DNA from: Adineta vaga
Lineage: Eukaryota > Animalia > Rotifera
Direction of reading: 5' to 3'
Length of the DNA: 64,000 nt
Assembly (NCBI GenBank): GCA_021613535.1
Contig: CP075496.1
Coordinates: 14,384,001-14,448,000 of the forward strand
The position numbers and the translations under genes are program-made. Below are positions 27,655 to 38,610 of this stretch, piece by piece. Below the pieces are notes generated by a model. The model saw nothing but the letters and a program-made list of their open reading frames with translations. It made no database searches and was not told the origin of the DNA. Numbering within the stretch: the first letter of the stretch is position 1; each line of letters starts with the position of its first letter.

Positions 27655-29590
27655 ATGTCATTCAATCTTGATTGTTTGAATAATTTAAATGAAATTCCAT
27701 TAAATACGACCAAATCAAAAGAATTAATTTATCCAAATTTCGAATTATCCAATGAAAATCTTTTATCAAAATTTTCTTCATTATTAATTGAAAATACATT
27801 TTCATCGAATGATTTACAAAATTTATTAAAAACTTGGGAAATAAAATCATCAAAATATATTTTATCATTAATAACTTATTTAATTATTAATCATTTAATA
27901 TTAATTATATTTTCGATTGTATTTTATATTTTAACGTATTTTTATTTAAAAAAATCGAAATCTTTATGGAAATTAATATTAATTTCTTTATTTTTCTTTC
28001 TAATTTTACTTCAAATGATTTTTCTTATTGAAAATATTTCTCAAACAAAATTTTATTTAAATAAATCAATGGATGAAATCTCATTTCAATTAACGAAAAA
28101 ACATTTTCTTAATGATTTATTAAAACAATTTCAAGAATTTACATCAAAATGTAAAATATATTTTCTTTTTTAATCTTTTTCTTAAATCATTTTCTTTTAG
28201 CAACATCAATAATTATTCATAATTCAAAATCTTTAATAAGAAATTCATTTAGTGATTATTATTCATTGAAAGAATTAAATAATTTATTAAAAATTATTAA
28301 TGAAAATTATAAATCATTAAAATTAATTTTATTCAAAAATGAAATTTTCAAAAAATTTCTTAATGATTTTGGAAAACTATTTGATTCAAATAATGATTTA
28401 TGTTATTTAATTGATAAACAAAATGAAAATGAAATAAAAAAACATTTTTTAAAAATCATTTCATTAATTGATGAAGAAATTCGTTTTTTTATTCAAATAT
28501 TTAATGAACAAATTTTAAATCGAATTTATCTCAAATCAAATCTTTCAAATCAAATTCGATATTTCATTTCATTTATTTCAATTTTATCATTTATTATTAT
28601 TCCATTGATTCTATTTTTTCCTCTTCTATTTATTCTTTTACTTATAAAACAATATTTTTCTCGTCAATCAATTCAACTTCAACAACGTTATCCAAGAAAT
28701 CATCATCGATCATCACGAAAACGAACTAGAAATAAATCATCATCTCGTTATGTTCTTTGTTCAATACGAATATCGTTTGGTATTCTTATTATTCTATGCA
28801 TTATTCTTTTATTAATAAGTACGATTGTTTATGGTTTGAATATGTTTCTACAAAGTTCTTGTCATTTAATTCATCATAATCAACCATTTATAATTTCATA
28901 TATAACAGGTAATGAAAAAGAAATATTTGAGAAAAAAGAATTTGTTTTTTTTTTAGAAAATTTTCTTAAATCAATTGATGAATTTAATGTGAATATAACA
29001 TTAATTAATTTAATAAATGATTGTAAAAATCAAAAACATTTTAGTAAAAATTATTTTAAGAAATTTTCAAAAAAATTAAATAAAGAATTTCTTCCAATGA
29101 TAAAAAATATTAATGAAAAAATTTATAATGAATTTGAAAAATCGAATCGAATGAAAAGATTTTCATCAAAAATTCAATTAATCAATGAATTTATTGATGT
29201 TATTCCTTCGAAAACAATTCAAAATCATTTAAATCTTATTCAAAAAACTTTTCAACAAATTGATTTTTTATTTACTAAAGTTCTTCAACAAAATTCACAA
29301 TTATCAAATCATTTTATCAATAAAACATTCAATCAAGTAATTTAATTTGTTCATTTTGTGTTTCAATTTTTTTATTTTAAATTTAGTTTGAATTATTTTT
29401 TGAAAATATTATTCAATCAAGTTTTGATTCATGTCCATTACCAATATCTGATATAATTAAATTAGATCAATTAATTTGTCATAGAACACTTAATCAAATC
29501 AATGGTTTATGGTTAAAAATCATCTTTTTTATTTTTTCAACTGTATTTTTTCTTTGTATTTTTGGTTTATATATCTTTAAAAAAGTTTAG
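27655..29590 (+). CDS. Divergent prominin-like multi-pass membrane protein
   Basis: Several TM segments separated by helical loops. Cys pattern SSCHL, NDCK, SCPLP...LICH...INGLW before the last TM resembles the prominin C-terminus. Confidence 0.55.
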
Positions 29591-30675
29591 TAAAATAATT
29601 TTTGTTAATGTCATCAAATTGACCAAGATCGAAGAGAAATTGGATGAGAAATTCCTTCAACAACAAATATTTCGTTTTTTATTTATTTCTATAACAACGA
29701 AAATTAATCGAGAAGACTAATCGTATGAAAACATGTTCGAAATGTATTAAGAAACCGATGAATACCATCAAATGAAGTTATTTTTGAGTGCATTCGAATA
29801 AGAAAAATATTTTCTGATTAGTTTTGATATAAATAAAATGTAATCGAAGATAGAAATCAGTATTTTGCTTATCTATTCAATAGTATAAAGAAAAGTAATC
29901 AATCAGATTATATTTCATTGTATTCGCTGATTTTTATCTTCAAATATATCTCTTCATATTATTCATAATGATTTAAAACGAAAAAAAAACAAAAATATTT
30001 TTCTTCTATTTTATGAGTATATGTATATATTATCAGGGATTTTCGAGATAAACTATTTAGTTTTCATTTTATAATCATCAATCTTATTTAATTTCAAAAT
30101 AGATAAACATTTTTAATTTTGATTAAAAATTTAGAGTATAAACGCAATCCATGTGCATATTGTGGTGACAAGGAGATTGGTTGTCGCCTATGTTATATAC
30201 AGTGTACTCCCGCAACTAATAAATATTCGGCTGCAAATTCGTTTTGTCCTTAATACGTTTTTAAAATTTTCTGCAAGAAGATTAATCGACAAAAATGACC
30301 TTTATTTTATTATTTAACTGTAGATCTTTTCTTTTTTCTAAATTTTTTATACAACAATTCTAACAAATTTATCTTCGTCTAATAAAACAAATTCAATTAT
30401 TCGAAATTCTTCATGTCATTATCTTTAATTCAAAATAAATCTCTGAAAAACATTCAAATAAAAAAAGAAATTTTGATTTCATTATTTTCGAAGTGAAAAA
30501 CATATTGAAGAACGAAAAATATCATATAGTTATTTTTCTTTTCTAATACGTCGTTGATAGATAATTAATCCTTGATCGATTTACGACGATGAAAGTAAGT
30601 GCAAATTTTTCATTTAAGCAAAATGTCTTCCGAGAAAAACAAAAGAAATTTCTTAAAATTGAATAAAAGTTCAAC

Positions 30676-32043
30676 ATGTCAATTCAATCGATCAATATTG
30701 ATAATTACAATTATGATCAATTGGATATTAATTATAGAAAGTGCAACATTCCAAATCTAGATGATTTCCAATTACGACCTGCAACAAATCAAGCTGAATT
30801 ATTAGATCGAGTTGAAAAACTTGATAAAATTTTACCAAAACTTGGTGTGAAGAATATTCTTGAACAAGCTAATCGTCAAGGTACAAAAAGTACAATACTA
30901 CAAACATGTAATCCAAATGCAACATTGAAAAGAAATTTAACAAATCCAAGTTATTGTTTTAATCCATCGGATAGTGGAACAATTAATGGAAATGTTGAAT
31001 GGATGCCACAAGGTGTAACAACAGTAGCTGATGCTCGAACAAGTCAAATATGGAATACAAAACAACCAATATTAATAACATGGTATGATAAAAAACCATC
31101 GAAACTAACAAATACTGATGCTGATAAAATTAAAGGTGCTCGTATTACATTTTTTGATCCTGAAACATCAAAATATCAACATGTTTTATTAGTTTATCCA
31201 TATATAAATAATAATGATAATATAACATATATGAGTTTACGTACAACACAAAAAGATGGTTATGATTCATTACATGCCGGTGGAATTGTTTGGTATGATA
31301 ATTATTTATATGTTGCTGATACAGCACGTGGATTTCGTGTTTTTGATATGAGATTTATTTTTGATTTGAATAAAGCAACAAATGGTGATACAAATGATAA
31401 AAATTTAATCGGATTTCAAAATGGAAAATATTTTGGACATGGTTATCGTTATATAATGCCACAAATTGGTGCATGGTCAAGTATTATTCCTCGAGATTCA
31501 AATAAAACATGTACAATCAATGCAGGATCTGCAACATTTTCTTTTGTTGCTCTTGATCGTACTGGTTCTGATCATTTAATTTCAGGAGAATTTTGTGGAG
31601 ATAAAATTGCTGGAGGTAATATTGATAAATCAGGTCGTGTAGCACGTTGGCCTCTTGATCAAACAACTGGTCAACCAAAACTTATTGATGGTATTTGGAA
31701 AGCTAATGCCGCTTATCGTTTACCAATATCAAATATACAAGGTGCTGTTTCATTTGAAAATAAATTCTATTTAAGTCGAAGTCAAGGAGCAAAAAATGGT
31801 TTCCTCTATAGAACAAAATCAATGAATTCATCTACAGGAATTTTAGAAATTGAAAGTACTCATTATGCTGCTGTTGGTCCAGAAGATTTATCACATTGGC
31901 CAAAACTTGATGGAAATTCAGGTGATCTTTGGACTGTTAGTGAACATGCTGGAAAACGTTTATTATATTCATGTAATATTAATAAACTTAACAATCGTGA
32001 AGAAATTGGAAATATTTGTGGAGAAAAACTTGATCTGGTCTAA
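30676..32043 (+). CDS. Intronless bacterial/fungal-type uncharacterised protein (probable beta-propeller-like fold), HGT candidate
   Basis: 455-aa uninterrupted ORF. Motifs WMPQGVTT, ITWYD, KGARITF, YQHVLLV, HAGGIVWYDNYLYVADT, YRYIMPQ, FSFVALDR, GPEDLS and LWTVSEHAGKR recall an actinobacterial/fungal secreted-protein family (from memory, not searched). Confidence 0.7.
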   Translation: MSIQSINIDNYNYDQLDINYRKCNIPNLDDFQLRPATNQAELLDRVEKLDKILPKLGVKNILEQANRQGTKSTILQTCNPNATLKRNLTNPSYCFNPSDSGTINGNVEWMPQGVTTVADARTSQIWNTKQPILITWYDKKPSKLTNTDADKIKGARITFFDPETSKYQHVLLVYPYINNNDNITYMSLRTTQKDGYDSLHAGGIVWYDNYLYVADTARGFRVFDMRFIFDLNKATNGDTNDKNLIGFQNGKYFGHGYRYIMPQIGAWSSIIPRDSNKTCTINAGSATFSFVALDRTGSDHLISGEFCGDKIAGGNIDKSGRVARWPLDQTTGQPKLIDGIWKANAAYRLPISNIQGAVSFENKFYLSRSQGAKNGFLYRTKSMNSSTGILEIESTHYAAVGPEDLSHWPKLDGNSGDLWTVSEHAGKRLLYSCNINKLNNREEIGNICGEKLDLV

Positions 32044-32249
32044 TTGATTCGATTCGATTAAATAAAATGAAATATTGATGAAAAGATATTTTTTATTTTT
32101 TCTACAAAAAAACGAAAATCACGAAATATAAAACTAAATCTTTTCTGTATCACAATCTAAACTAATACTGGAATAGATAAATCTATAAGGTCGTTTGGTA
32201 AACAAATATCTATTTGTTCTGTTTGTAATCATCTGTATTGATAAGATTT

Positions 32250-35018
32250 TTAATTTATTTTTTTTCTTGTAAGTTCAATATTTAATCCTCCTTCTGGTGC
32301 ATTAACAACATCAGCAGCTGCATAACAAGATTGTAATGTCGCTGTTTCTCTATCACCTAAGACATGATCTAAATTATGATTCATAAAATTGGTCATATCA
32401 GCTTCAGCAAATCTTCCAAATTCATCTGATTCTTCTCGAATTGTTAATTGTTGAGCTAAATTTGAAAAACTAATTTTTAATGGTGTACCTAAACTAAAAT
32501 CATCTGTTGGTTCTTGATCTAAAATACATTTTTGAACTAATTTAGCTACATCATAAGCATAAAATTCTAGCCAAGCTAATGTTGATTGATTAGAATTTGT
32601 TGCATCTCGTTTTGGATTAAATTGATCAGCTAATTTTCTTAATTCATCTTTATTTGGACGTGTTTCACCAATCATTGTTTGCCATGCAAGATCAAAATCA
32701 GTCATATGTAAAGATAAAGCTGTATTACGCATAAAATCTCTTGCAGATTTTCCACAAAGATACATTGCATGAAGTTCATCATATTTAATACTTTTTAAAC
32801 CTTCATAAACACTTAAATAAGTTAAAAAATGTGTTCCACTATGTGCTGAAATACGTTCAACAGTAATCGCACGATTATTTAATAATTTTGGTTTATCACC
32901 ACGAATACTTCGAACTGTTATTTTATCTGAATTTGATCCTCCACCACCACGTTTTGATGGACGAGAACTTAAATTTCCCAAAATAACCGAAACCCAAGGT
33001 GCATTTGCAAATAATTGATTAAAACTATTATTTCCTGATTCAGTATCATTATCATCATCAAGATCACCCATAAAATTAAAATAAGTTTCTCTCATAACTT
33101 GACAAGCTTTATGAAAATTTCCAATATGATAATCTTGATCATAACCTTCAGGTGCATGACGTGGTGGAACATAATGTGTTCCATCTGCTTTTAATTCTGT
33201 TTGAACACGTGCATGAAGATTTTGTGCAACTAATGATTCTAATGTATGTAAACAAATCGATGTTGGAGAGAAAAGTATTTGCATTTGATGACCTTGAAGT
33301 GTTAATAATGATGGACCAAGAGTTTTAGCATGAAAATATCTTGCAACACGTCCATTATTATGTGGAACTTCAGTAACACGTCCACCACCACGTTGTAAAG
33401 CTGCACCACCACCACTAAAACCATTAATTGTTAAAGTTTTTAATTCAGGATATTTCGCACGAAATTGATCAACCATTGCATAAACTTTTCCTAACGCTTC
33501 TTCTTGTGATGATTCAGCACCACGACCATTTCTTCTTACTGTATCACTTTTAGCAATCATTGGAATTAATTTTCCTCGAAAAGCTAAATGTTTTCGATAA
33601 ATTGGATCATCAACTAATTCAGAAATAAGATCAGGTAATTCTTGTAAATCTTTAACTGATTCACTTAATGTAACAATATCAAGAACAGTTTCTTTTTCAG
33701 CCACACAATTTCCACTTGCTTTCAATAGAAGAAAAACAGCTAAAACATTAACAATTGATTTTGTTTCAGCAATAATTAATTTATTAAATATATCCAAATC
33801 ATTTGGTATTAATTTTAATCGACCAAATATTCTTCCAGCTGTTTTACTCGATTTTGTTAATTCATCTTGATTTGTTAATTTTAATTTTTCAATTATTTGT
33901 TCATCATTTAACCATTGATTTATTAAATTTTTCTGTTCTTTTAATGATAAAGATAAGAAATCATCGTGTAAATGATTGATTTTTAAAAGATGTGTTAATG
34001 TATCCATAATATCAATAGCATTATGTCGAATATCAATCTGTGCGTAATAAAAACCAAATGTTCGAATTTTATAAATTAAATCTTCAGTATTTGGAAGAGA
34101 TTTGAGATCATCAATAAATTCTTCGGGTGTTTTATAAGAATTTGAATTGAATTTTTGTTCAATCGAATTGTTTTCCTCTGATGAAATTTGTTTTAAATCA
34201 ATTAAATATAATTCTTTAATTCTTTGTTTTAATTGTTGAATAGCTTTTTCTAAAGCTTTAATATCAGCATTTTCATTTCCATCACCATCACCAGCTGACC
34301 AAATTGATGCTTGAATTTTTGGTATATTAACATCAATAACTTTTTTATATTCTGGAAAATCTTCTAAAGTTTCAATTAATTGTTTTCTTAATTTTGGTGT
34401 TGTATGATAAATCATATCAAGAATTGCTAATGTTTCATTAACTTCTTCTTCAATTGTTTTCTTTTTTCCAGCTAAAGGTATATTTTGAATAACTTTTAAT
34501 TGCTCGGAATAATCGATATTATCATCTAATAATTTATCAAAAACAATACCACCTTGAATTGTATATTCCATTGATGTTGGATTTGTTGGATGCATTGTTA
34601 AACTAAATATTGCAAATGCATTTTCATTGAAAAATTTTGCAACTATTTCTGGTTCAACATTTTCTTCTTTCATTCGTGTAAAAACATAATCAAATCGATC
34701 AGCTGTTGCTGTACTATTTGGATTTTCAATTTTTTCATTATAAATTTTTGCATTAACAAATTTTCGAACACGACGTTCTAAATCCATTATTTTAGCATAA
34801 TATTCAATTAATTTTTCACGTTCAACACTTCCAAATGATAATTCATCTAAGATTTTTTGATAAACATCAATTCGTTTTTCACGATTGGAATTCGTTGAAA
34901 TATGAAAGATTTTTCGTAAATAACCAGCAATTTTGTTATTATCTTTCGCGATTTGACTAATAAATCGATTTCGAACGGTTTTTTGATCATCGGATAATTC
35001 TAAAATTTCGTCTTCCAT
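32250..35018 (-). CDS. ppc: Divergent phosphoenolpyruvate carboxylase (PEPC family), intronless CDS, HGT candidate
   Basis: 922 aa with PEPC motifs in the correct order: LTMHPT, WSAGDGDGN, FG...IDIRH, TLSES, MIAKSD, FSGGGAALQRGGG, TLQG, NLSSRPSKR, NRAI. Confidence 0.88.
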   Translation of the reverse strand: MEDEILELSDDQKTVRNRFISQIAKDNNKIAGYLRKIFHISTNSNREKRIDVYQKILDELSFGSVEREKLIEYYAKIMDLERRVRKFVNAKIYNEKIENPNSTATADRFDYVFTRMKEENVEPEIVAKFFNENAFAIFSLTMHPTNPTSMEYTIQGGIVFDKLLDDNIDYSEQLKVIQNIPLAGKKKTIEEEVNETLAILDMIYHTTPKLRKQLIETLEDFPEYKKVIDVNIPKIQASIWSAGDGDGNENADIKALEKAIQQLKQRIKELYLIDLKQISSEENNSIEQKFNSNSYKTPEEFIDDLKSLPNTEDLIYKIRTFGFYYAQIDIRHNAIDIMDTLTHLLKINHLHDDFLSLSLKEQKNLINQWLNDEQIIEKLKLTNQDELTKSSKTAGRIFGRLKLIPNDLDIFNKLIIAETKSIVNVLAVFLLLKASGNCVAEKETVLDIVTLSESVKDLQELPDLISELVDDPIYRKHLAFRGKLIPMIAKSDTVRRNGRGAESSQEEALGKVYAMVDQFRAKYPELKTLTINGFSGGGAALQRGGGRVTEVPHNNGRVARYFHAKTLGPSLLTLQGHQMQILFSPTSICLHTLESLVAQNLHARVQTELKADGTHYVPPRHAPEGYDQDYHIGNFHKACQVMRETYFNFMGDLDDDNDTESGNNSFNQLFANAPWVSVILGNLSSRPSKRGGGGSNSDKITVRSIRGDKPKLLNNRAITVERISAHSGTHFLTYLSVYEGLKSIKYDELHAMYLCGKSARDFMRNTALSLHMTDFDLAWQTMIGETRPNKDELRKLADQFNPKRDATNSNQSTLAWLEFYAYDVAKLVQKCILDQEPTDDFSLGTPLKISFSNLAQQLTIREESDEFGRFAEADMTNFMNHNLDHVLGDRETATLQSCYAAADVVNAPEGGLNIELTRKKIN

Positions 35019-35573
35019 TTTCGAAATTTATCTAAAAAGAAAATAGGAATCAAAACAAATGAATTCTTTGTTAATAATCAGTCAATTATCATTGGTGAAT
35101 TTTATGTCTCAATCAATTTCTAAGAAATTGATTTTCTTTTCTTTTGAATGAATCGATTTAAAGAAATCAATTGATTTCGATACAAATTCAATTCAATAAC
35201 ATTTTAATAAATAAAAATTTAAACAGAGGGAGCTATATTCTTCAACGATAGACCATACAAACCTATTCTTGTAGAATTCTTTCGTCTTATAACTGTTTCT
35301 TGTCTTTACTTACTTGTTTTTCTCTTCTTTTCTTTTTTCATTTGTTGGGTGCATTTCATTGAGTATATAAATCTTTCGATAAGAGTACGAATATGAAGGT
35401 AAAGGTTAACTTATTCTCGTTTCTAGATAAAATTCAAAAGAAATAAATAATCACTCATGCAGATCATCTCGTCAATCTTTTAATAAAATCATTCTTCGTT
35501 TTTATGGATATGAAACCGAATAAATACAACTCATGTAAAAGATATTTCTGAAAAAGTAAACTATTAAGTACTT

Positions 35574-35666
35574 TCAATATTTGGTTTTTGATAAAGAATA
35601 GTACTTATAAGTAACTAAAAAAGGTTCGTCTATAAGTACTATGCTCTATTAAAAACCAAATATTGA
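35574..35666. repeat. Inverted repeat (36-bp arms, 3 mismatches, 21-nt loop)
   Basis: TCAATATTTGGTTTTTGATAAAGAATAGTACTTATA pairs with TATAAGTACTATGCTCTATTAAAAACCAAATATTGA. Confidence 0.8.
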
Positions 35667-38610
35667 CGGTGAAAAATAGTACTTTTTTCGTACATGGAAC
35701 TTTTCTTAATCAGATCAAAATAACATATGGAAAAAAATCCGATATAAAATTTTGTCAATATTTGTAGAAACGAAATCATATCGAATAAGTCATTTCATTG
35801 AGTCAAATCAAATTTTTATCAACAATGAATTCTTTTTTCTCTTTTAAGTTTAATTTATTTTTTATTCGAAATAACGAAACTATATAATAAAGATCATATC
35901 ATATTTGCAATGAGAAAAGACAAGTTTAATTCTTTGTTTCCCAATGTTCACTCCGGTAAACATTGGAAAAATAGTCGTGAAAAACGTTGGGAATACTTGA
36001 CTCATATGATCGACAATTTCGTAGAAAGACGAATGTGCTGTGAAAATAATTTGCTATTTTTAACCAATGATAGAGGCAGCAGCTCTTTAATTGCTCTTCT
36101 TGATTTATTGTAAAAGTACCCACAGCCATCTATTTTTCGACAGACAGTAGTTTTGAAATAGCTGTCTCAAATTTTTAAAATAAAAATGTTGGACGTGTTG
36201 GTTGATAAGAGTTCTTTTTCATCTTCGATGAAACTTTTCTTATTTATGGTTGTGAAATAAATGAACATTACCTCAAAAGAAGAAAAAAGTTGTGTGAAAG
36301 CGCGCCTCCACGGGGATTTTCTAATCAGGGAGAGTCTTCTGTTGTGGGTGGAGAGTTAATTGTTTAACTTATTAACGTATTTCATTGTCGCTTTGTCCAT
36401 AAAAAGATTAATTGGAAGAATTTTTTCACTTCTTATTTCCAAATTATTCTGAACTAAATAAAATCTCAACCTGATTCATAGATAGCTTGATTAAGCAAAT
36501 AAAATGTTTCTTTTTTGTTTCGAAAGATTTCTTGAGAATTTTCACATTGACGAATCATTTTTAGATAAGATTCTGGACAAAATGTTACCAATAGATTCCA
36601 ATAAGAATTCAAAATCCTTGTCTCTAAATCGGATGATTATGTGTGCTTGAAAAAGTACAGATGATACAGATAATTCGAAAGAGTTAAACTTTATTTCATA
36701 ACTAGCTACATTCAAATAATATTATTCATTAAAAAAAAAAGTCTATTATAAATCATTAGCATTTCATATACATGTTTATTTCAAGAGGGAAAAGGCAGAC
36801 TTCTGTACTTCTAGACTTTTGAAGTCCTGCTTCTTCTGTCTTGGTTTATTTTCTTAATAATCTCATCATTCATTTTTGTTTTTGTTCGAATTCTATGTTA
36901 ACAACATCTACAGATTTTCTGTACTGATAAAAACGAAAAAGAAAACTTATACATGGCCCTGTATTACAGCAATTGAATATCTAAGGTTGTCTCCATATTA
37001 TAGTAAGATATTACTCTTTTCGAAATGTTTTTTTGACGTTTAAACTCCGAATAGAGAGATGATTTTTTGTGTGTAACTCATAAAGGATACGATTGATGAA
37101 ACATAACTATGAAGAGACGCTCATAGACTGATTCTACGATGTGTTAAGTACATAAAGATAGTATTAACCGTTCGTTCTGCTTGATTTATTCAATAGAATC
37201 TTTTGTTAATATACGATGACCTTTTCACCTCTTTTACTTTTGCTTTATTTTGTATGAAAATATGTTCAATAAATAATTTCAATGAAGATATTATTCATTT
37301 ATTTCAATAATATTTATAAGTATATTTTTTTTCTTCACATTTCAAATAATATTTGATTCACCTTGTCAATTATTATTTATCGTGATAAATTATATTTCTG
37401 TGATTTTTCTATCGAAGAAAAACAACAAGGTATAAGATTGTTTCAAGGTTATATTTATATGATTGAATGTTTGAGACGAAGAAATTCTTATTAAATCGAA
37501 TAAATAAAAATGTCAATCGATAAATTCTAAAAATAGTAAATGAGTTTTCTCATTGAAACGATTGACAAAAAAAAAGAGAACGAGAGAGAGAGAGAAACAT
37601 TATGTAGTGATATAACATAAAGATGAAATGATCGGTTCGATAATTTTTCTCGTTCTTTTTCTTTTTTTTTCATATTTTATAATTTGCTTCTGATTTACAA
37701 ACGTGTGCTTAGAACATATAAAAAAAACTCGTTGTCGTCGTCTCACCTCGAATTATTTCTTCATGTATATTCAAATGAATATTTAGAAAGAAAGAAGAAA
37801 ACGTGAACAAATGTTTTTATTTAATTCATCTTCTTCAAAATATGTAAGTGGAAATTAATTTGAACAAAAAAAAACGAAAGTGAAATGGAAATTTGTTTCT
37901 TTAAAGAATTTAATATTTGATCAAGTTGATAATGAAATTCAAACGAAAAATATTTTTTTACGTCGATGTTTTATTATTTTAATTGTTTGTTTATTTTTAT
38001 TTCTTTTGCATTCAAAATCAATTGATTATTAATGTATTGAAATCTTATGTAATAAAAAGAACATTTTCTTTTTCCGAATTTAATCATTTGACAATGAGAT
38101 TTTTAGTTAACGTTATTCTTCCATTTACAAATCGATCCTTTTATTGGAGAAACAGTTCAATGACTCGAAAACGCATCAAATTCGAGTGTTGAGTTTTATT
38201 TCTCGAAGATCTGAAGAATGTGAAAAAAAACAAAAATTTTTCTGGAATTCGAGTCCTGAATACATTGGTATGAATGTATAGAATAATGGTTCTGGTTTTC
38301 TTTTTTTTCTTATCGAAAAATGTGTAAATGAATGATTAATAAGAGTTGATTGATACGAATATAGATTAGAAGTTTGGATTGTCTTGTGACACATCGATGT
38401 TAGAGAAAGAGAAAAAATGAACAGCCATCTATTTGACCGATAGAGAGGGAGAGAGGAATGCCTCTTGAGATTATCAGTCAGCTGAGTGAAACTAGCAAGG
38501 AGAGAAAGAAAGAAAGAAAAAGAAAAAGAAAAGAATCCGAGGTCATTCTTTCTCGTATTTTTCATCTGACCTAAAACACCAATTTATTGTTTGATTAAAA
38601 GAATATTCAA

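What the first reader, a model, noticed from the sequence alone, without database searches (positions are those of the whole stretch)
32250..35018. A phosphoenolpyruvate carboxylase in an animal genome, with a remodelled active site
Established: PEPC occurs in bacteria, plants, algae and some protists, while animals use pyruvate carboxylase/PEPCK. Seen: an intact, intronless 922-aa ORF with host-like AT-rich codons among intron-rich metazoan genes. By manual alignment to E. coli numbering, H138 (MHPT), R396 (DIRH), E506 (LSES), D543 (KSD), R587 (QRGGG), R699 (SRPSKR) and R713 (NRAI) appear retained. Normally invariant positions are changed: GDRDGNP to GDGDGNE, GYSDSxK to AKSDTVR (K546R), FHGRGG to FSGGGA (H579S, R581G) and RAIPW to RAITV. 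The C-terminal RNTG of the aspartate/malate inhibition site is absent. Inference: a domesticated foreign enzyme, possibly feedback-insensitive or with altered chemistry, giving an ATP-independent CO2-fixing/anaplerotic route that may matter in hypoxia or desiccation recovery.
Basis: partly seen in the sequence, partly recalled or inferred. Interest (0 to 1): 0.85.

Follow-up and report, generated by a model that had tools for sequence, protein, structure and literature searches.

The report
Bacterial PEPC-like enzyme gene in rotifer
A bdelloid rotifer chromosome carries an intact, conserved gene taken long ago from Rickettsiales-like bacteria; it encodes an uncharacterised, deeply divergent relative of phosphoenolpyruvate carboxylase, and the same genome also has an ordinary copy of that enzyme.

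Summary

The interpretation needs three corrections.
- **The "remodelling" is inherited.** GDGDGN, AKSDTxRR, F(N/S)GGGxALQRGGGR and RAIT are hallmarks of a whole bacterial clade (Micavibrio and Rickettsiales MAGs). The bdelloid genes nest inside it, next to an ankyrin-rich bacterial contig.
- **It is not the animal's only PEPC.** The genome (Adineta vaga, 6 chromosomes) also has a canonical PEPC with introns and all classical motifs on another chromosome. That PEPC-family genes occur in bdelloids was reported in 2012.
- **Carboxylase activity is unproven.** H138, R396, E506, D543, R587, R699 and R713 are kept. R581, H579 and K546 are replaced, as are two of the four aspartate/malate-site residues.

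The gene is truly integrated: metazoan genes flank it on a 15-Mb contig, and its codon composition is host-like. It is present in all bdelloid lineages sampled and under purifying selection (omega 0.09). It is probably transcribed. Its duplicate on another chromosome carries two frameshifts.

Best reading: a divergent, aspartate/malate-insensitive PEP carboxylase, with about 55% confidence in that activity.

The parts
32250..35018 (-). Intronless 922-aa ORF for a divergent PEPC-fold protein of the Micavibrio/Rickettsiales-type clade
   Evidence: ORF. Pfam PF00311 at 113 bits. AF2 pLDDT 92.7. Foldseek TM 0.71-0.75 to PEPC structures. Nested in a bacterial clade. Omega 0.094.
34584..34598 (-). 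TMHPT motif holding H143, the equivalent of the E. coli catalytic base H138
   Evidence: Alignment: H in 23/23 canonical, 37/37 clade and 6/6 bdelloid sequences. Translation check.
34272..34292 (-). GDGDGNE in place of canonical GDRDGNP (R253G, P257E)
   Evidence: GDGDGN is invariant across the 25-sequence clade alignment A1.
33531..33554 (-). AKSDTVRR in place of GYSDSxKD. Metal ligand D492 (=D543) is kept, K546 becomes R, D547 becomes R.
   Evidence: MIAKSDTxR is a clade hallmark.
33378..33419 (-). Gly-rich catalytic lid loop FSGGGAALQRGGGR in place of FHGRGGxxGRGGxP. H579 becomes S, R581 becomes G, R587 is kept as R543.
32949..32969 (-). SSRPSKR, the counterpart of canonical GSRPAKR, holding R686 (=R699) and R690 (=R703)
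32859..32873 (-). RAITV in place of RAIPW. R716 (=R713) is kept; P716 and W717 are lost.
32079..32249 (-). Probable 3' UTR, with AATAAA at 32092-32097 about 13 nt before the end of the longest transcript-like contig
   Evidence: Contig pieces 32079-35033 (run X15) and 32165-34949 (run X1). Sequence. AATAAA is common by chance in DNA this AT-rich.

Best explanation
SHOWN:
- The gene is a horizontally acquired bacterial gene, fixed in the bdelloid lineage before the sampled lineages (Adineta, Rotaria, Didymodactylos) diverged.
- It belongs to a deeply divergent, experimentally uncharacterised clade of the PEPC superfamily. This clade is found in Micavibrio and Rickettsiales-like Alphaproteobacteria, and its nearest relative sits on an AT-rich, ankyrin-rich bacterial contig.
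- It is integrated among metazoan genes, has taken on host codon composition and has stayed intronless.
- It evolves under strong purifying selection, while its duplicate on another chromosome has picked up two frameshifts.

INFERRED mechanism:
- It is still a divalent-metal-dependent enzyme that uses PEP and works through the PEPC route: phosphoryl transfer to bicarbonate, an enolate held on the metal, and carboxylation to oxaloacetate.
- The reason is that it keeps the metal ligands (E453, D492), the Arg residues R331, R686 and R716, the His base H143 that E. coli mutagenesis ties to the carboxylation step, and the lid-loop Arg R543.
- The lid loop and the presumed bicarbonate site are rewired (R581G, H579S, K546R, plus new Arg at positions 547 and 591). 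Half of the aspartate/malate site is gone.
- It is therefore expected to be insensitive to aspartate/malate and kinetically distinct from the canonical rotifer PEPC. The acidic N-terminus gives no sign of a presequence, so it probably acts in the cytosol (judged by eye only).

Confidence by part: HGT and clade membership about 0.95; carboxylase activity about 0.55.
For: - Fold and homology.
- Retention of catalytic, metal and Arg positions in 37/37 bacterial and 6/6 bdelloid members.
- Clade hallmarks invariant across 25 sequences.
- Bacterial hosts named, including the complete Micavibrio aeruginosavorus HCB189 genome.
- Tree: bdelloids (SH-aLRT 100) are sister to P0027/P0028 (100), then to the Rickettsiales MAG pair P0031/P0032, all inside a bacterial clade separated from canonical PEPCs by long branches.
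- Bacterial gene contexts.
- In five bacterial genomes the divergent gene is the only PF00311 match. None has pyruvate carboxylase above cut-off or ATP-PEPCK, and all have PPDK.
- In the order of the Rickettsiales MAG, 33 of 81 sampled genomes carry only low-scoring divergent-type matches and none carries a canonical PEPC. This fits the clade being these bacteria's PEPC.
- Integration.
- Intronless orthologues at 68-84% identity in A. ricciae, A. steineri, Rotaria and Didymodactylos.
- Omega 0.094 under GY+F3X4.
- Transcript-like contigs bounded by the ORF, with nothing over 35162-35900 in four runs whose contigs total 18-28 Mb for a 101-Mb genome.
Against: - R581, H579 and K546 are near-invariant in canonical PEPCs (22/23 each) and lie in or beside the catalytic lid. 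Their clade-wide replacement could mean a different substrate or phosphoryl acceptor.
- No clade member has been assayed, and no paper on it was found.
- The NCBIfam PEPC equivalog threshold is missed by a wide margin.
- The rotifer keeps a canonical PEPC as well, which argues for a non-redundant role.
- Predatory and intracellular bacteria that feed on amino acids may not need anaplerosis. Most Micavibrio-order genomes sampled (52 of 61) have no PEPC-family gene at all.
- The runs are only guessed to be RNA, so expression is not proven.
- No conserved operon partner was found to hint at a pathway.
Confidence: 0.6

Rival explanations
1. The clade is a neofunctionalised enzyme on the PEPC scaffold. 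It still binds a metal and PEP or a similar enol or 2-oxo acid but catalyses a different reaction. Candidates include another electrophile or phosphoryl acceptor, PEP hydrolysis, or oxaloacetate decarboxylation. Bdelloids would keep it beside canonical PEPC because the two are not redundant.
For: - Clade-wide loss of R581, H579, P716 and W717 and the change of K546, against 21-23 of 23 conservation at each position in canonical PEPCs.
- About 15-20% identity to canonical PEPCs and long separating branches.
- Both types coexist in the rotifer.
- Some bacterial genomes carry two divergent copies.
Against: - H138 is retained in every member, and from recollection E. coli mutagenesis ties it specifically to the carboxylation step.
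- R587, both metal ligands and the Arg residues at 396, 699 and 713 are also retained in every member.
- The new Arg at positions 547 and 591 may compensate for the loss of R581.
- No canonical PEPC was found in any genome that carries the divergent type.
Confidence: 0.27
2. The protein is a non-catalytic or regulatory PEPC-like subunit. One possibility is a hetero-oligomer with the canonical rotifer PEPC, by analogy with plant class-2 PTPC/BTPC complexes.
For: - PEPCs are homotetramers, and hetero-octameric class-2 complexes exist in plants (review PMC8100219).
- Two PEPC-family genes are present in one genome.
Against: - Catalytic and metal-binding residues are invariant across a clade whose members are only about 30% identical to one another.
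- In bacteria the protein occurs without any canonical partner.
- The two rotifer genes come from different donors.
Confidence: 0.07
3. The active site was remodelled after transfer into the animal.
For: Only H579 to Ser (Asn in most bacterial members) and the Glu after GDGDGN look specific to bdelloids.
Against: Every other substitution is present in 30-37 of the 37 bacterial members.
Confidence: 0.03
4. The ORF is bacterial contamination or a misassembly.
For: It is intronless and of bacterial ancestry.
Against: - It lies inside a 15.2-Mb contig with MINDY-3/4 and transferrin exons in the same window.
- GC3 is 6.9%, like the host exons, against 26-54% in bacterial relatives.
- A second copy lies on another chromosome.
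- Orthologues occur in at least six independent bdelloid assemblies, with the same neighbouring gene in A. ricciae.
Confidence: 0.01

Closest known systems
Bacterial/plant-type phosphoenolpyruvate carboxylase (bpPEPC; Pfam PF00311; E. coli Ppc, PDB 1FIY/1JQN; maize and Arabidopsis PEPCs)
   Same: - Full-length fold (TM 0.71-0.75) and similar size.
- TxHPT with the catalytic His, DIRH/Q Arg, the Glu and Asp metal ligands, the Gly-rich lid with R587, SRPxKR and RAI with R713.
   Different: - Only about 15% identity, and far below the NCBIfam equivalog cut-off.
- Clade-wide R253G, G540A, Y541K, K546R, D547R, H579N/S, R581G, P716T, W717V, K773M and N881V, with no QNTG/RNTG C-terminus.
- No member has been assayed.
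The canonical PEPC of the same rotifer genome (C6:4821669-4824746, minus strand)
   Same: Also a foreign-type PEPC-family gene in the same animal; both have AT-rich host-like composition.
   Different: - The C6 gene has several introns, is about 37-67% identical to E. coli Ppc exon by exon, and carries every canonical motif including LRNTG.
- The window gene is intronless and divergent, from a different bacterial source clade.
Archaeal-type PEPC (atPEPC; Pfam PF14010; C. perfringens 3ODM)
   Same: Another strongly divergent PEPC lineage that lacks the bpPEPC inhibitor-site residues (review PMC8100219).
   Different: atPEPC is 55-60 kDa. The window protein is 922 aa, and the clade profile matches 3ODM only at E 0.34 against 1e-34 to 1e-38 for bpPEPC structures.
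Plant bacterial-type PEPC (BTPC) of class-2 complexes
   Same: A second, divergent PEPC paralogue kept beside a canonical one in a eukaryote, with altered regulation.
   Different: BTPC is grouped within bpPEPC in the review and is described as a catalytic subunit. Nothing here shows that the two rotifer proteins interact.

Membership tests
PEPC superfamily (Pfam PF00311 PEPcase) | Sequence match above the Pfam gathering score | tested here: met
   113.1 bits against a cut-off of 22.4, but only residues 311-629 align. The clade profile against PDB PEPCs gives E 1e-34 to 1e-38. hhalign gives prob 100, E 2e-59 over 702 columns.
PEPC superfamily (Pfam PF00311 PEPcase) | Full-length PEPC fold | tested here: met
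   AF2 pLDDT 92.7, pTM 0.93. The top 50 Foldseek PDB hits are all PEPCs, TM 0.65-0.75, E about 1e-27.
Canonical PEPC enzyme (EC 4.1.1.31; NCBIfam equivalog NF000584) | Score above the equivalog cut-off | tested here: not met
   107.3 bits against a cut-off of 815.
Canonical PEPC enzyme (EC 4.1.1.31; NCBIfam equivalog NF000584) | Catalytic His138, lid Arg587, metal ligands Glu506/Asp543, and Arg396/699/713 | tested here: met
   All are retained in the window protein (H143, R543, E453, D492, R331, R686, R716) and in 37/37 bacterial clade members.
Canonical PEPC enzyme (EC 4.1.1.31; NCBIfam equivalog NF000584) | Near-invariant motif residues R253 (GDRDGNP), K546 (GYSDSxK), H579 and R581 (FHGRGG), P716/W717 (RAIPW) | tested here: not met
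   They are G, R, S, G, T and V in the window protein. H579, R581 and K546 are each 22/23 in canonical PEPCs; R253 is read from the motif consensus.
Canonical PEPC enzyme (EC 4.1.1.31; NCBIfam equivalog NF000584) | Aspartate/malate allosteric site (E. coli R587, K773, R832, N881) and C-terminal (Q/R)NTG | tested here: not met
   R587 and R832 are kept. K773 is Met (supported by both MAFFT and hhalign). N881 is Val and NTG is absent (the C-terminal alignment is less certain). Site definition from PMC3586729.
Canonical PEPC enzyme (EC 4.1.1.31; NCBIfam equivalog NF000584) | PEP plus bicarbonate to oxaloacetate plus phosphate activity | not testable with these tools
Divergent Micavibrio/Rickettsiales-type PEPC-like clade (defined here) | Hallmark motifs GDGDGN, MIAKSDTxRR, F(N/S)GGGxALQRGGGR, SSRPxKR and RAI(T/S/G), and placement inside the clade | tested here: met
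   Invariant columns of A1. The bdelloid clade is nested with SH-aLRT 99-100 on the relevant forks.
Horizontally transferred gene domesticated in a bdelloid | Linkage to metazoan genes, orthologues across bdelloids, nesting in a bacterial clade, host-like composition, purifying selection | tested here: met
Horizontally transferred gene domesticated in a bdelloid | Transcription | tested here: inconclusive
   Contigs of runs guessed to be RNA cover the ORF discretely and leave the upstream intergenic DNA uncovered. The library type is not on record.

The most novel reading that the evidence does not exclude
The Micavibrio/Rickettsiales-type clade is a fifth, unrecognised PEPC lineage whose rewired lid loop and bicarbonate site give it a different chemistry or substrate from PEP carboxylation. 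Bdelloid rotifers captured it and keep it beside a canonical PEPC because it supplies a metabolic step that no other animal has.
Probability: 0.25. Interest if true: 0.7.

Novelty: new variant of a known kind. Interest (0 to 1): 0.45.

Why it matters
- **For PEPC biology.** A 2020 review recognises four PEPC types (bacterial, BTPC, PTPC, archaeal-type) and states that animals lack PEPC (PMC8100219). This gene points to a further, uncharacterised lineage. It is common in Rickettsiales-like bacteria (33 of 81 genomes sampled in one order) and in Micavibrio. In that lineage residues treated as invariant in PEPC (R581, H579, K546) are replaced, while the residues tied to catalysis by mutagenesis are kept. 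Assaying one member would show whether those residues are dispensable for carboxylation or whether the scaffold supports new chemistry.
- **For rotifer biology.** Bdelloids hold two independently acquired PEPC-family genes of very different type. One has gained introns and one has not. The intronless one has a decaying duplicate. This makes a tidy case of parallel domestication and differential retention.
- **For annotation.** Public records call these proteins simply "phosphoenolpyruvate carboxylase", which goes beyond the evidence.

Tried and rejected
- **Genome-collection scans.** The first scan, with the rotifer protein alone, found nothing. The scan with the clade alignment worked.
- **Conserved bacterial neighbours.** ORFs of 50 loci were clustered. 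No partner is shared beyond closely related genomes, so there is no operon clue.
- **Co-occurrence test in the Micavibrio order.** 5 genomes had the divergent type only, 4 the canonical only and 52 neither. That is too few to call mutual exclusion.
- **dN/dS by Nei-Gojobori.** It gave 0.23-0.61, and YN00 failed on most pairs. I judged these unreliable because third positions are about 93% A/T, and used an ML codon model instead (omega 0.094).
- **Literature.** Searches for R581 and H138 roles and for Micavibrio or Rickettsiales PEPC gave nothing usable. The stated roles of H138, H579, R581, R587 and K546 therefore rest on my recollection of E. coli and maize mutagenesis and structure papers (Terada and Izui; Yano; Kai; Matsumura) and should be checked.
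- **Boschetti 2012 supplements.** They list one EC 4.1.1.31 contig, but it is not possible to tell which of the two genes it is.
- **ESM Atlas.** It added nothing beyond "PEPcase".
- **Contamination and rotifer-specific remodelling.** Both were considered and rejected (see rivals).
- **Not done.**
  - Complex prediction was not used because a PEPC dimer exceeds its size limit.
Full report
**1. Observation**

Window 32250-35018 (-) is an intact 922-aa ORF. It matches Pfam PEPcase at 113 bits against a cut-off of 22.4, but only across residues 311-629. It scores 107 bits against the NCBIfam PEPC equivalog, whose cut-off is 815. phmmer against PDB sequences finds E. coli Ppc only at E 1.5e-4. So this is a PEPC homologue, but a very distant one.

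An AlphaFold2 model built on a 68-sequence alignment is confident (pLDDT 92.7, pTM 0.93). Its top Foldseek matches in the PDB are all PEPCs over the full length (TM 0.65-0.75 among the top 50, about 15% identity).

**2. Whose genome**

The assembly is 100.8 Mb in 6 contigs, and the window is C4:14384001-14448000 of a 15.2-Mb contig. The second copy of the gene lies on a 16,930,519-bp contig. That is the contig length recorded for the NCBI protein I4U23_027244 of Adineta vaga, so this is a chromosome-level A. vaga assembly.

The window holds few long ORFs. Among them are exons of MINDY-3/4 deubiquitinase and transferrin. GC3 of the ORF is 6.9%, like those exons (6-17%) and unlike the nearest bacterial homologues (26-54%). 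Contamination is excluded for practical purposes.

**3. Relatives and origin**

Intronless orthologues at 68-84% identity occur in A. ricciae, A. steineri, several Rotaria and Didymodactylos carnosus, and in unnamed metagenome or Logan contigs. No other named eukaryote appears among the hits.

Below 55% identity all relatives sit in bacterial contexts.
- P0027/P0028 (53-54%) lie on a 34%-GC contig packed with ankyrin-repeat genes.
- P0032 (45%) lies in an uncultured Rickettsiales MAG beside topA and lpxK.
- P0039 lies in a 599-kb bacterial scaffold.

A pattern scan of one genome per bacterial species found 48 loci. They are Micavibrio (including the complete M. aeruginosavorus HCB189 genome), many Rickettsiales MAGs and other Alphaproteobacteria. 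An exhaustive HMMER search found 82 clusters at E<1e-30. Canonical PEPCs appear only at E about 1e-10 to 1e-15.

In an ML tree of 77 sequences the bdelloids form one clade (SH-aLRT 100). It is sister to P0027/P0028 (100), then to P0031/P0032 and P0033. All of this lies inside the bacterial divergent clade, which is separated from canonical PEPCs by branches of 0.9 + 0.9 substitutions per site. The reading is a single bacterium-to-bdelloid transfer before the sampled bdelloid lineages diverged, from an AT-rich, ankyrin-rich and therefore probably host-associated alphaproteobacterium.

**4. The "remodelled active site"**

I aligned E. coli Ppc (L007), 23 canonical PEPCs, 37 bacterial clade members and 6 bdelloid proteins. 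I checked the result with a profile-profile alignment.

The substitutions, however, are clade-wide.

| E. coli position | Bacterial clade members (of 37) | Bdelloids (of 6) |
|---|---|---|
| G540A | 37 | 6 |
| Y541K | 31 | 6 |
| K546R | 36 | 6 |
| D547R | 24 | 6 |
| H579 | Asn in 25 | Ser in 6 |
| R581G | 33 | 6 |
| P716 | Thr/Ser/Gly in 35 | Thr in 6 |
| W717 | lost in all | Val in 6 |
| K773M | 31 | 6 |
| N881 | Val in 16; never Asn among the four commonest residues | Val in 6 |

H138, R396, E506, D543, R587, R699 and R713 are invariant, and R703 and R832 nearly so. The clade alignment shows GDGDGN, MIAKSDTxR, GGGxxLQRGGG, SSRPxKR and RAI as invariant or nearly invariant blocks.

The rotifer therefore inherited this active site. 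Only Ser at position 579 and Glu after GDGDGN look bdelloid-specific.

**5. It is not the animal's only PEPC**

Searching the whole genome with PF00311 finds three loci.
- The window gene.
- A second divergent copy on C5.
- A multi-exon gene at C6:4821669-4824746 (-), whose six matched exon segments together score about 870 bits.

Compared exon by exon with E. coli Ppc, the C6 gene is 37-67% identical. It carries TAHPTE, GGDRD/GNPNVT (split by an intron), GYSDSAKDAG, FHGRGG, GSRPAKR, RAIPW and LRNTG. I did not build or search a joined spliced model.

An anaplerotic PEPC route in this animal does not depend on the window gene. A eubacterial PEPC among A. ricciae foreign transcripts was already reported by Boschetti et al. 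2012 (PMC3499245). Their supplement lists one contig for EC 4.1.1.31, and it cannot be told which gene that is. Another first-stage note in this scan (s1-482779) says a PEPC elsewhere in the genome gained a presequence-like first exon. This probably refers to the C6 gene, but I did not test it.

**6. Selection and the duplicate**

An ML codon model (GY+F3X4) on A. vaga C4 and C5, A. ricciae, A. steineri, Rotaria and Didymodactylos gives omega = 0.094. Nei-Gojobori ratios of 0.23-0.61 are unreliable here, because third positions are about 93% A/T.

The C5 copy is 91.6% identical in DNA. It has a +2 insertion at nt 499 and a +1 insertion at nt 2201, which put codons 167-734 out of frame. It also has an in-frame +3 insertion. 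The public gene model (885 aa) bridges the shifts with 53-nt and 40-nt "introns".

Polarised with A. ricciae and A. steineri, the C5 lineage has 32 synonymous and 70 nonsynonymous codon changes, against 23 and 23 on C4. Its branch is three times longer. For this analysis only, the inserted bases were dropped from the C5 row. The C5 copy is most simply a decaying duplicate. Assembly error or real splicing is not excluded.

**7. Expression**

Eighteen public runs hold the sequence or part of it. I laid four of them, and all are kept as contigs. Run X15 has a 2955-nt contig at 32079-35033, and X1 a 2785-nt contig at 32165-34949. The neighbouring gene has separate contigs, and none of the four runs covers 35162-35900.

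The contigs of these runs total 18-28 Mb for a 101-Mb genome. This pattern looks like transcripts, but the library type is not on record, so expression is probable rather than shown. AATAAA lies at 32092-32097, about 13 nt before the X15 contig end. That is weak evidence in DNA this AT-rich.

**8. What it does**

No clade member has been characterised in the literature I could search.

Evidence that fits PEP carboxylation:
- All residues that I recall mutagenesis and structures tying to catalysis are kept. These are H138 for the carboxylation step, R587 in the lid, E506 and D543 for the metal, and R396, R699 and R713. These roles are from memory of the work of Kai, Matsumura, Izui and colleagues and were not re-read here.
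- In five bacterial genomes the divergent gene is the only PEPC-family match. None has pyruvate carboxylase above cut-off or ATP-PEPCK, and all have PPDK.
- In the order of the Rickettsiales MAG, 33 of 81 genomes have divergent-type matches only, and none has a canonical PEPC.

Evidence against:
- R581, H579 and K546 are replaced.
- The two types coexist in the rotifer.
- There is no operon clue.
- Most Micavibrio-order genomes sampled have no PEPC-family gene at all.

The aspartate/malate site is defined as Flaveria R641, K829, R888 and N964, which correspond to E. coli R587, K773, R832 and N881 (PMC3586729). Half of it is lost here, so insensitivity to feedback is a reasonable prediction.

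I put about 55% on a genuine but kinetically and regulatorily distinct PEP carboxylase. I put about 27% on a different reaction on the same scaffold, and about 7% on a non-catalytic role.

**9. Comparison with known types, and novelty**

A 2020 review lists four PEPC types and says animals have none (PMC8100219). This clade is none of the four. It has the size and fold of bpPEPC but lies far outside it, and it is not the 55-60 kDa archaeal type (E 0.34 to 3ODM).

The bdelloid gene is a member of this uncharacterised clade. Databases label it simply as PEPC. I rate it a new variant of a known kind. The HGT itself is ordinary for bdelloids, and a PEPC-family foreign transcript in bdelloids was already published.

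**10. Verdict**

Interest is moderate (0.45). The value lies in the unrecognised PEPC lineage and in the two-PEPC situation in bdelloids, not in "an animal with PEPC".

Noticed in passing
window 30676-32043 (+): The 455-aa intronless ORF lying tail-to-tail with the PEPC-like gene is a second foreign gene from a different donor. Its best non-rotifer relatives are actinobacterial 'secreted proteins' (Streptomyces and others, 45-60% identity; one is labelled LVIVD repeat). It has no Pfam match. The pair is syntenic in A. ricciae (L068) but the ORF is absent beside the C5 copy.
   Followed up: partly
G000:C6:4821669-4824746 (-) (L060): A canonical PEPC gene with about six introns and all classical motifs, about 37-67% identical to E. 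coli Ppc exon by exon. One intron splits the GDRD/GNP motif. Its donor and its 5' exon were not examined.
   Followed up: partly
G000:C5:16587398-16590163 (-) (L061): A duplicate of the window gene with +2 and +1 frameshifting insertions 1.7 kb apart. It is publicly annotated as an 885-aa protein by way of two tiny 'introns' (53 and 40 nt) that exactly absorb the shifts. It also has an excess of nonsynonymous change.
   Followed up: yes
bacterial genomes G070, G074, G106, G133: Some Rickettsiales-order genomes carry two separate divergent-type PEPC-like ORFs, some as long as 1200-1360 aa. This hints at sub-families or extra domains within the clade.
   Followed up: no
window 28001-30000: The lowest-GC stretch of the window (18.8% GC), just upstream of the two foreign genes.
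   Followed up: no
L039: One clade member is filed under a Verrucomicrobiota MAG (Lentimonas sp.) but groups tightly with Rickettsiales MAG sequences. This could be a binning error or a transfer between bacteria.
   Followed up: no
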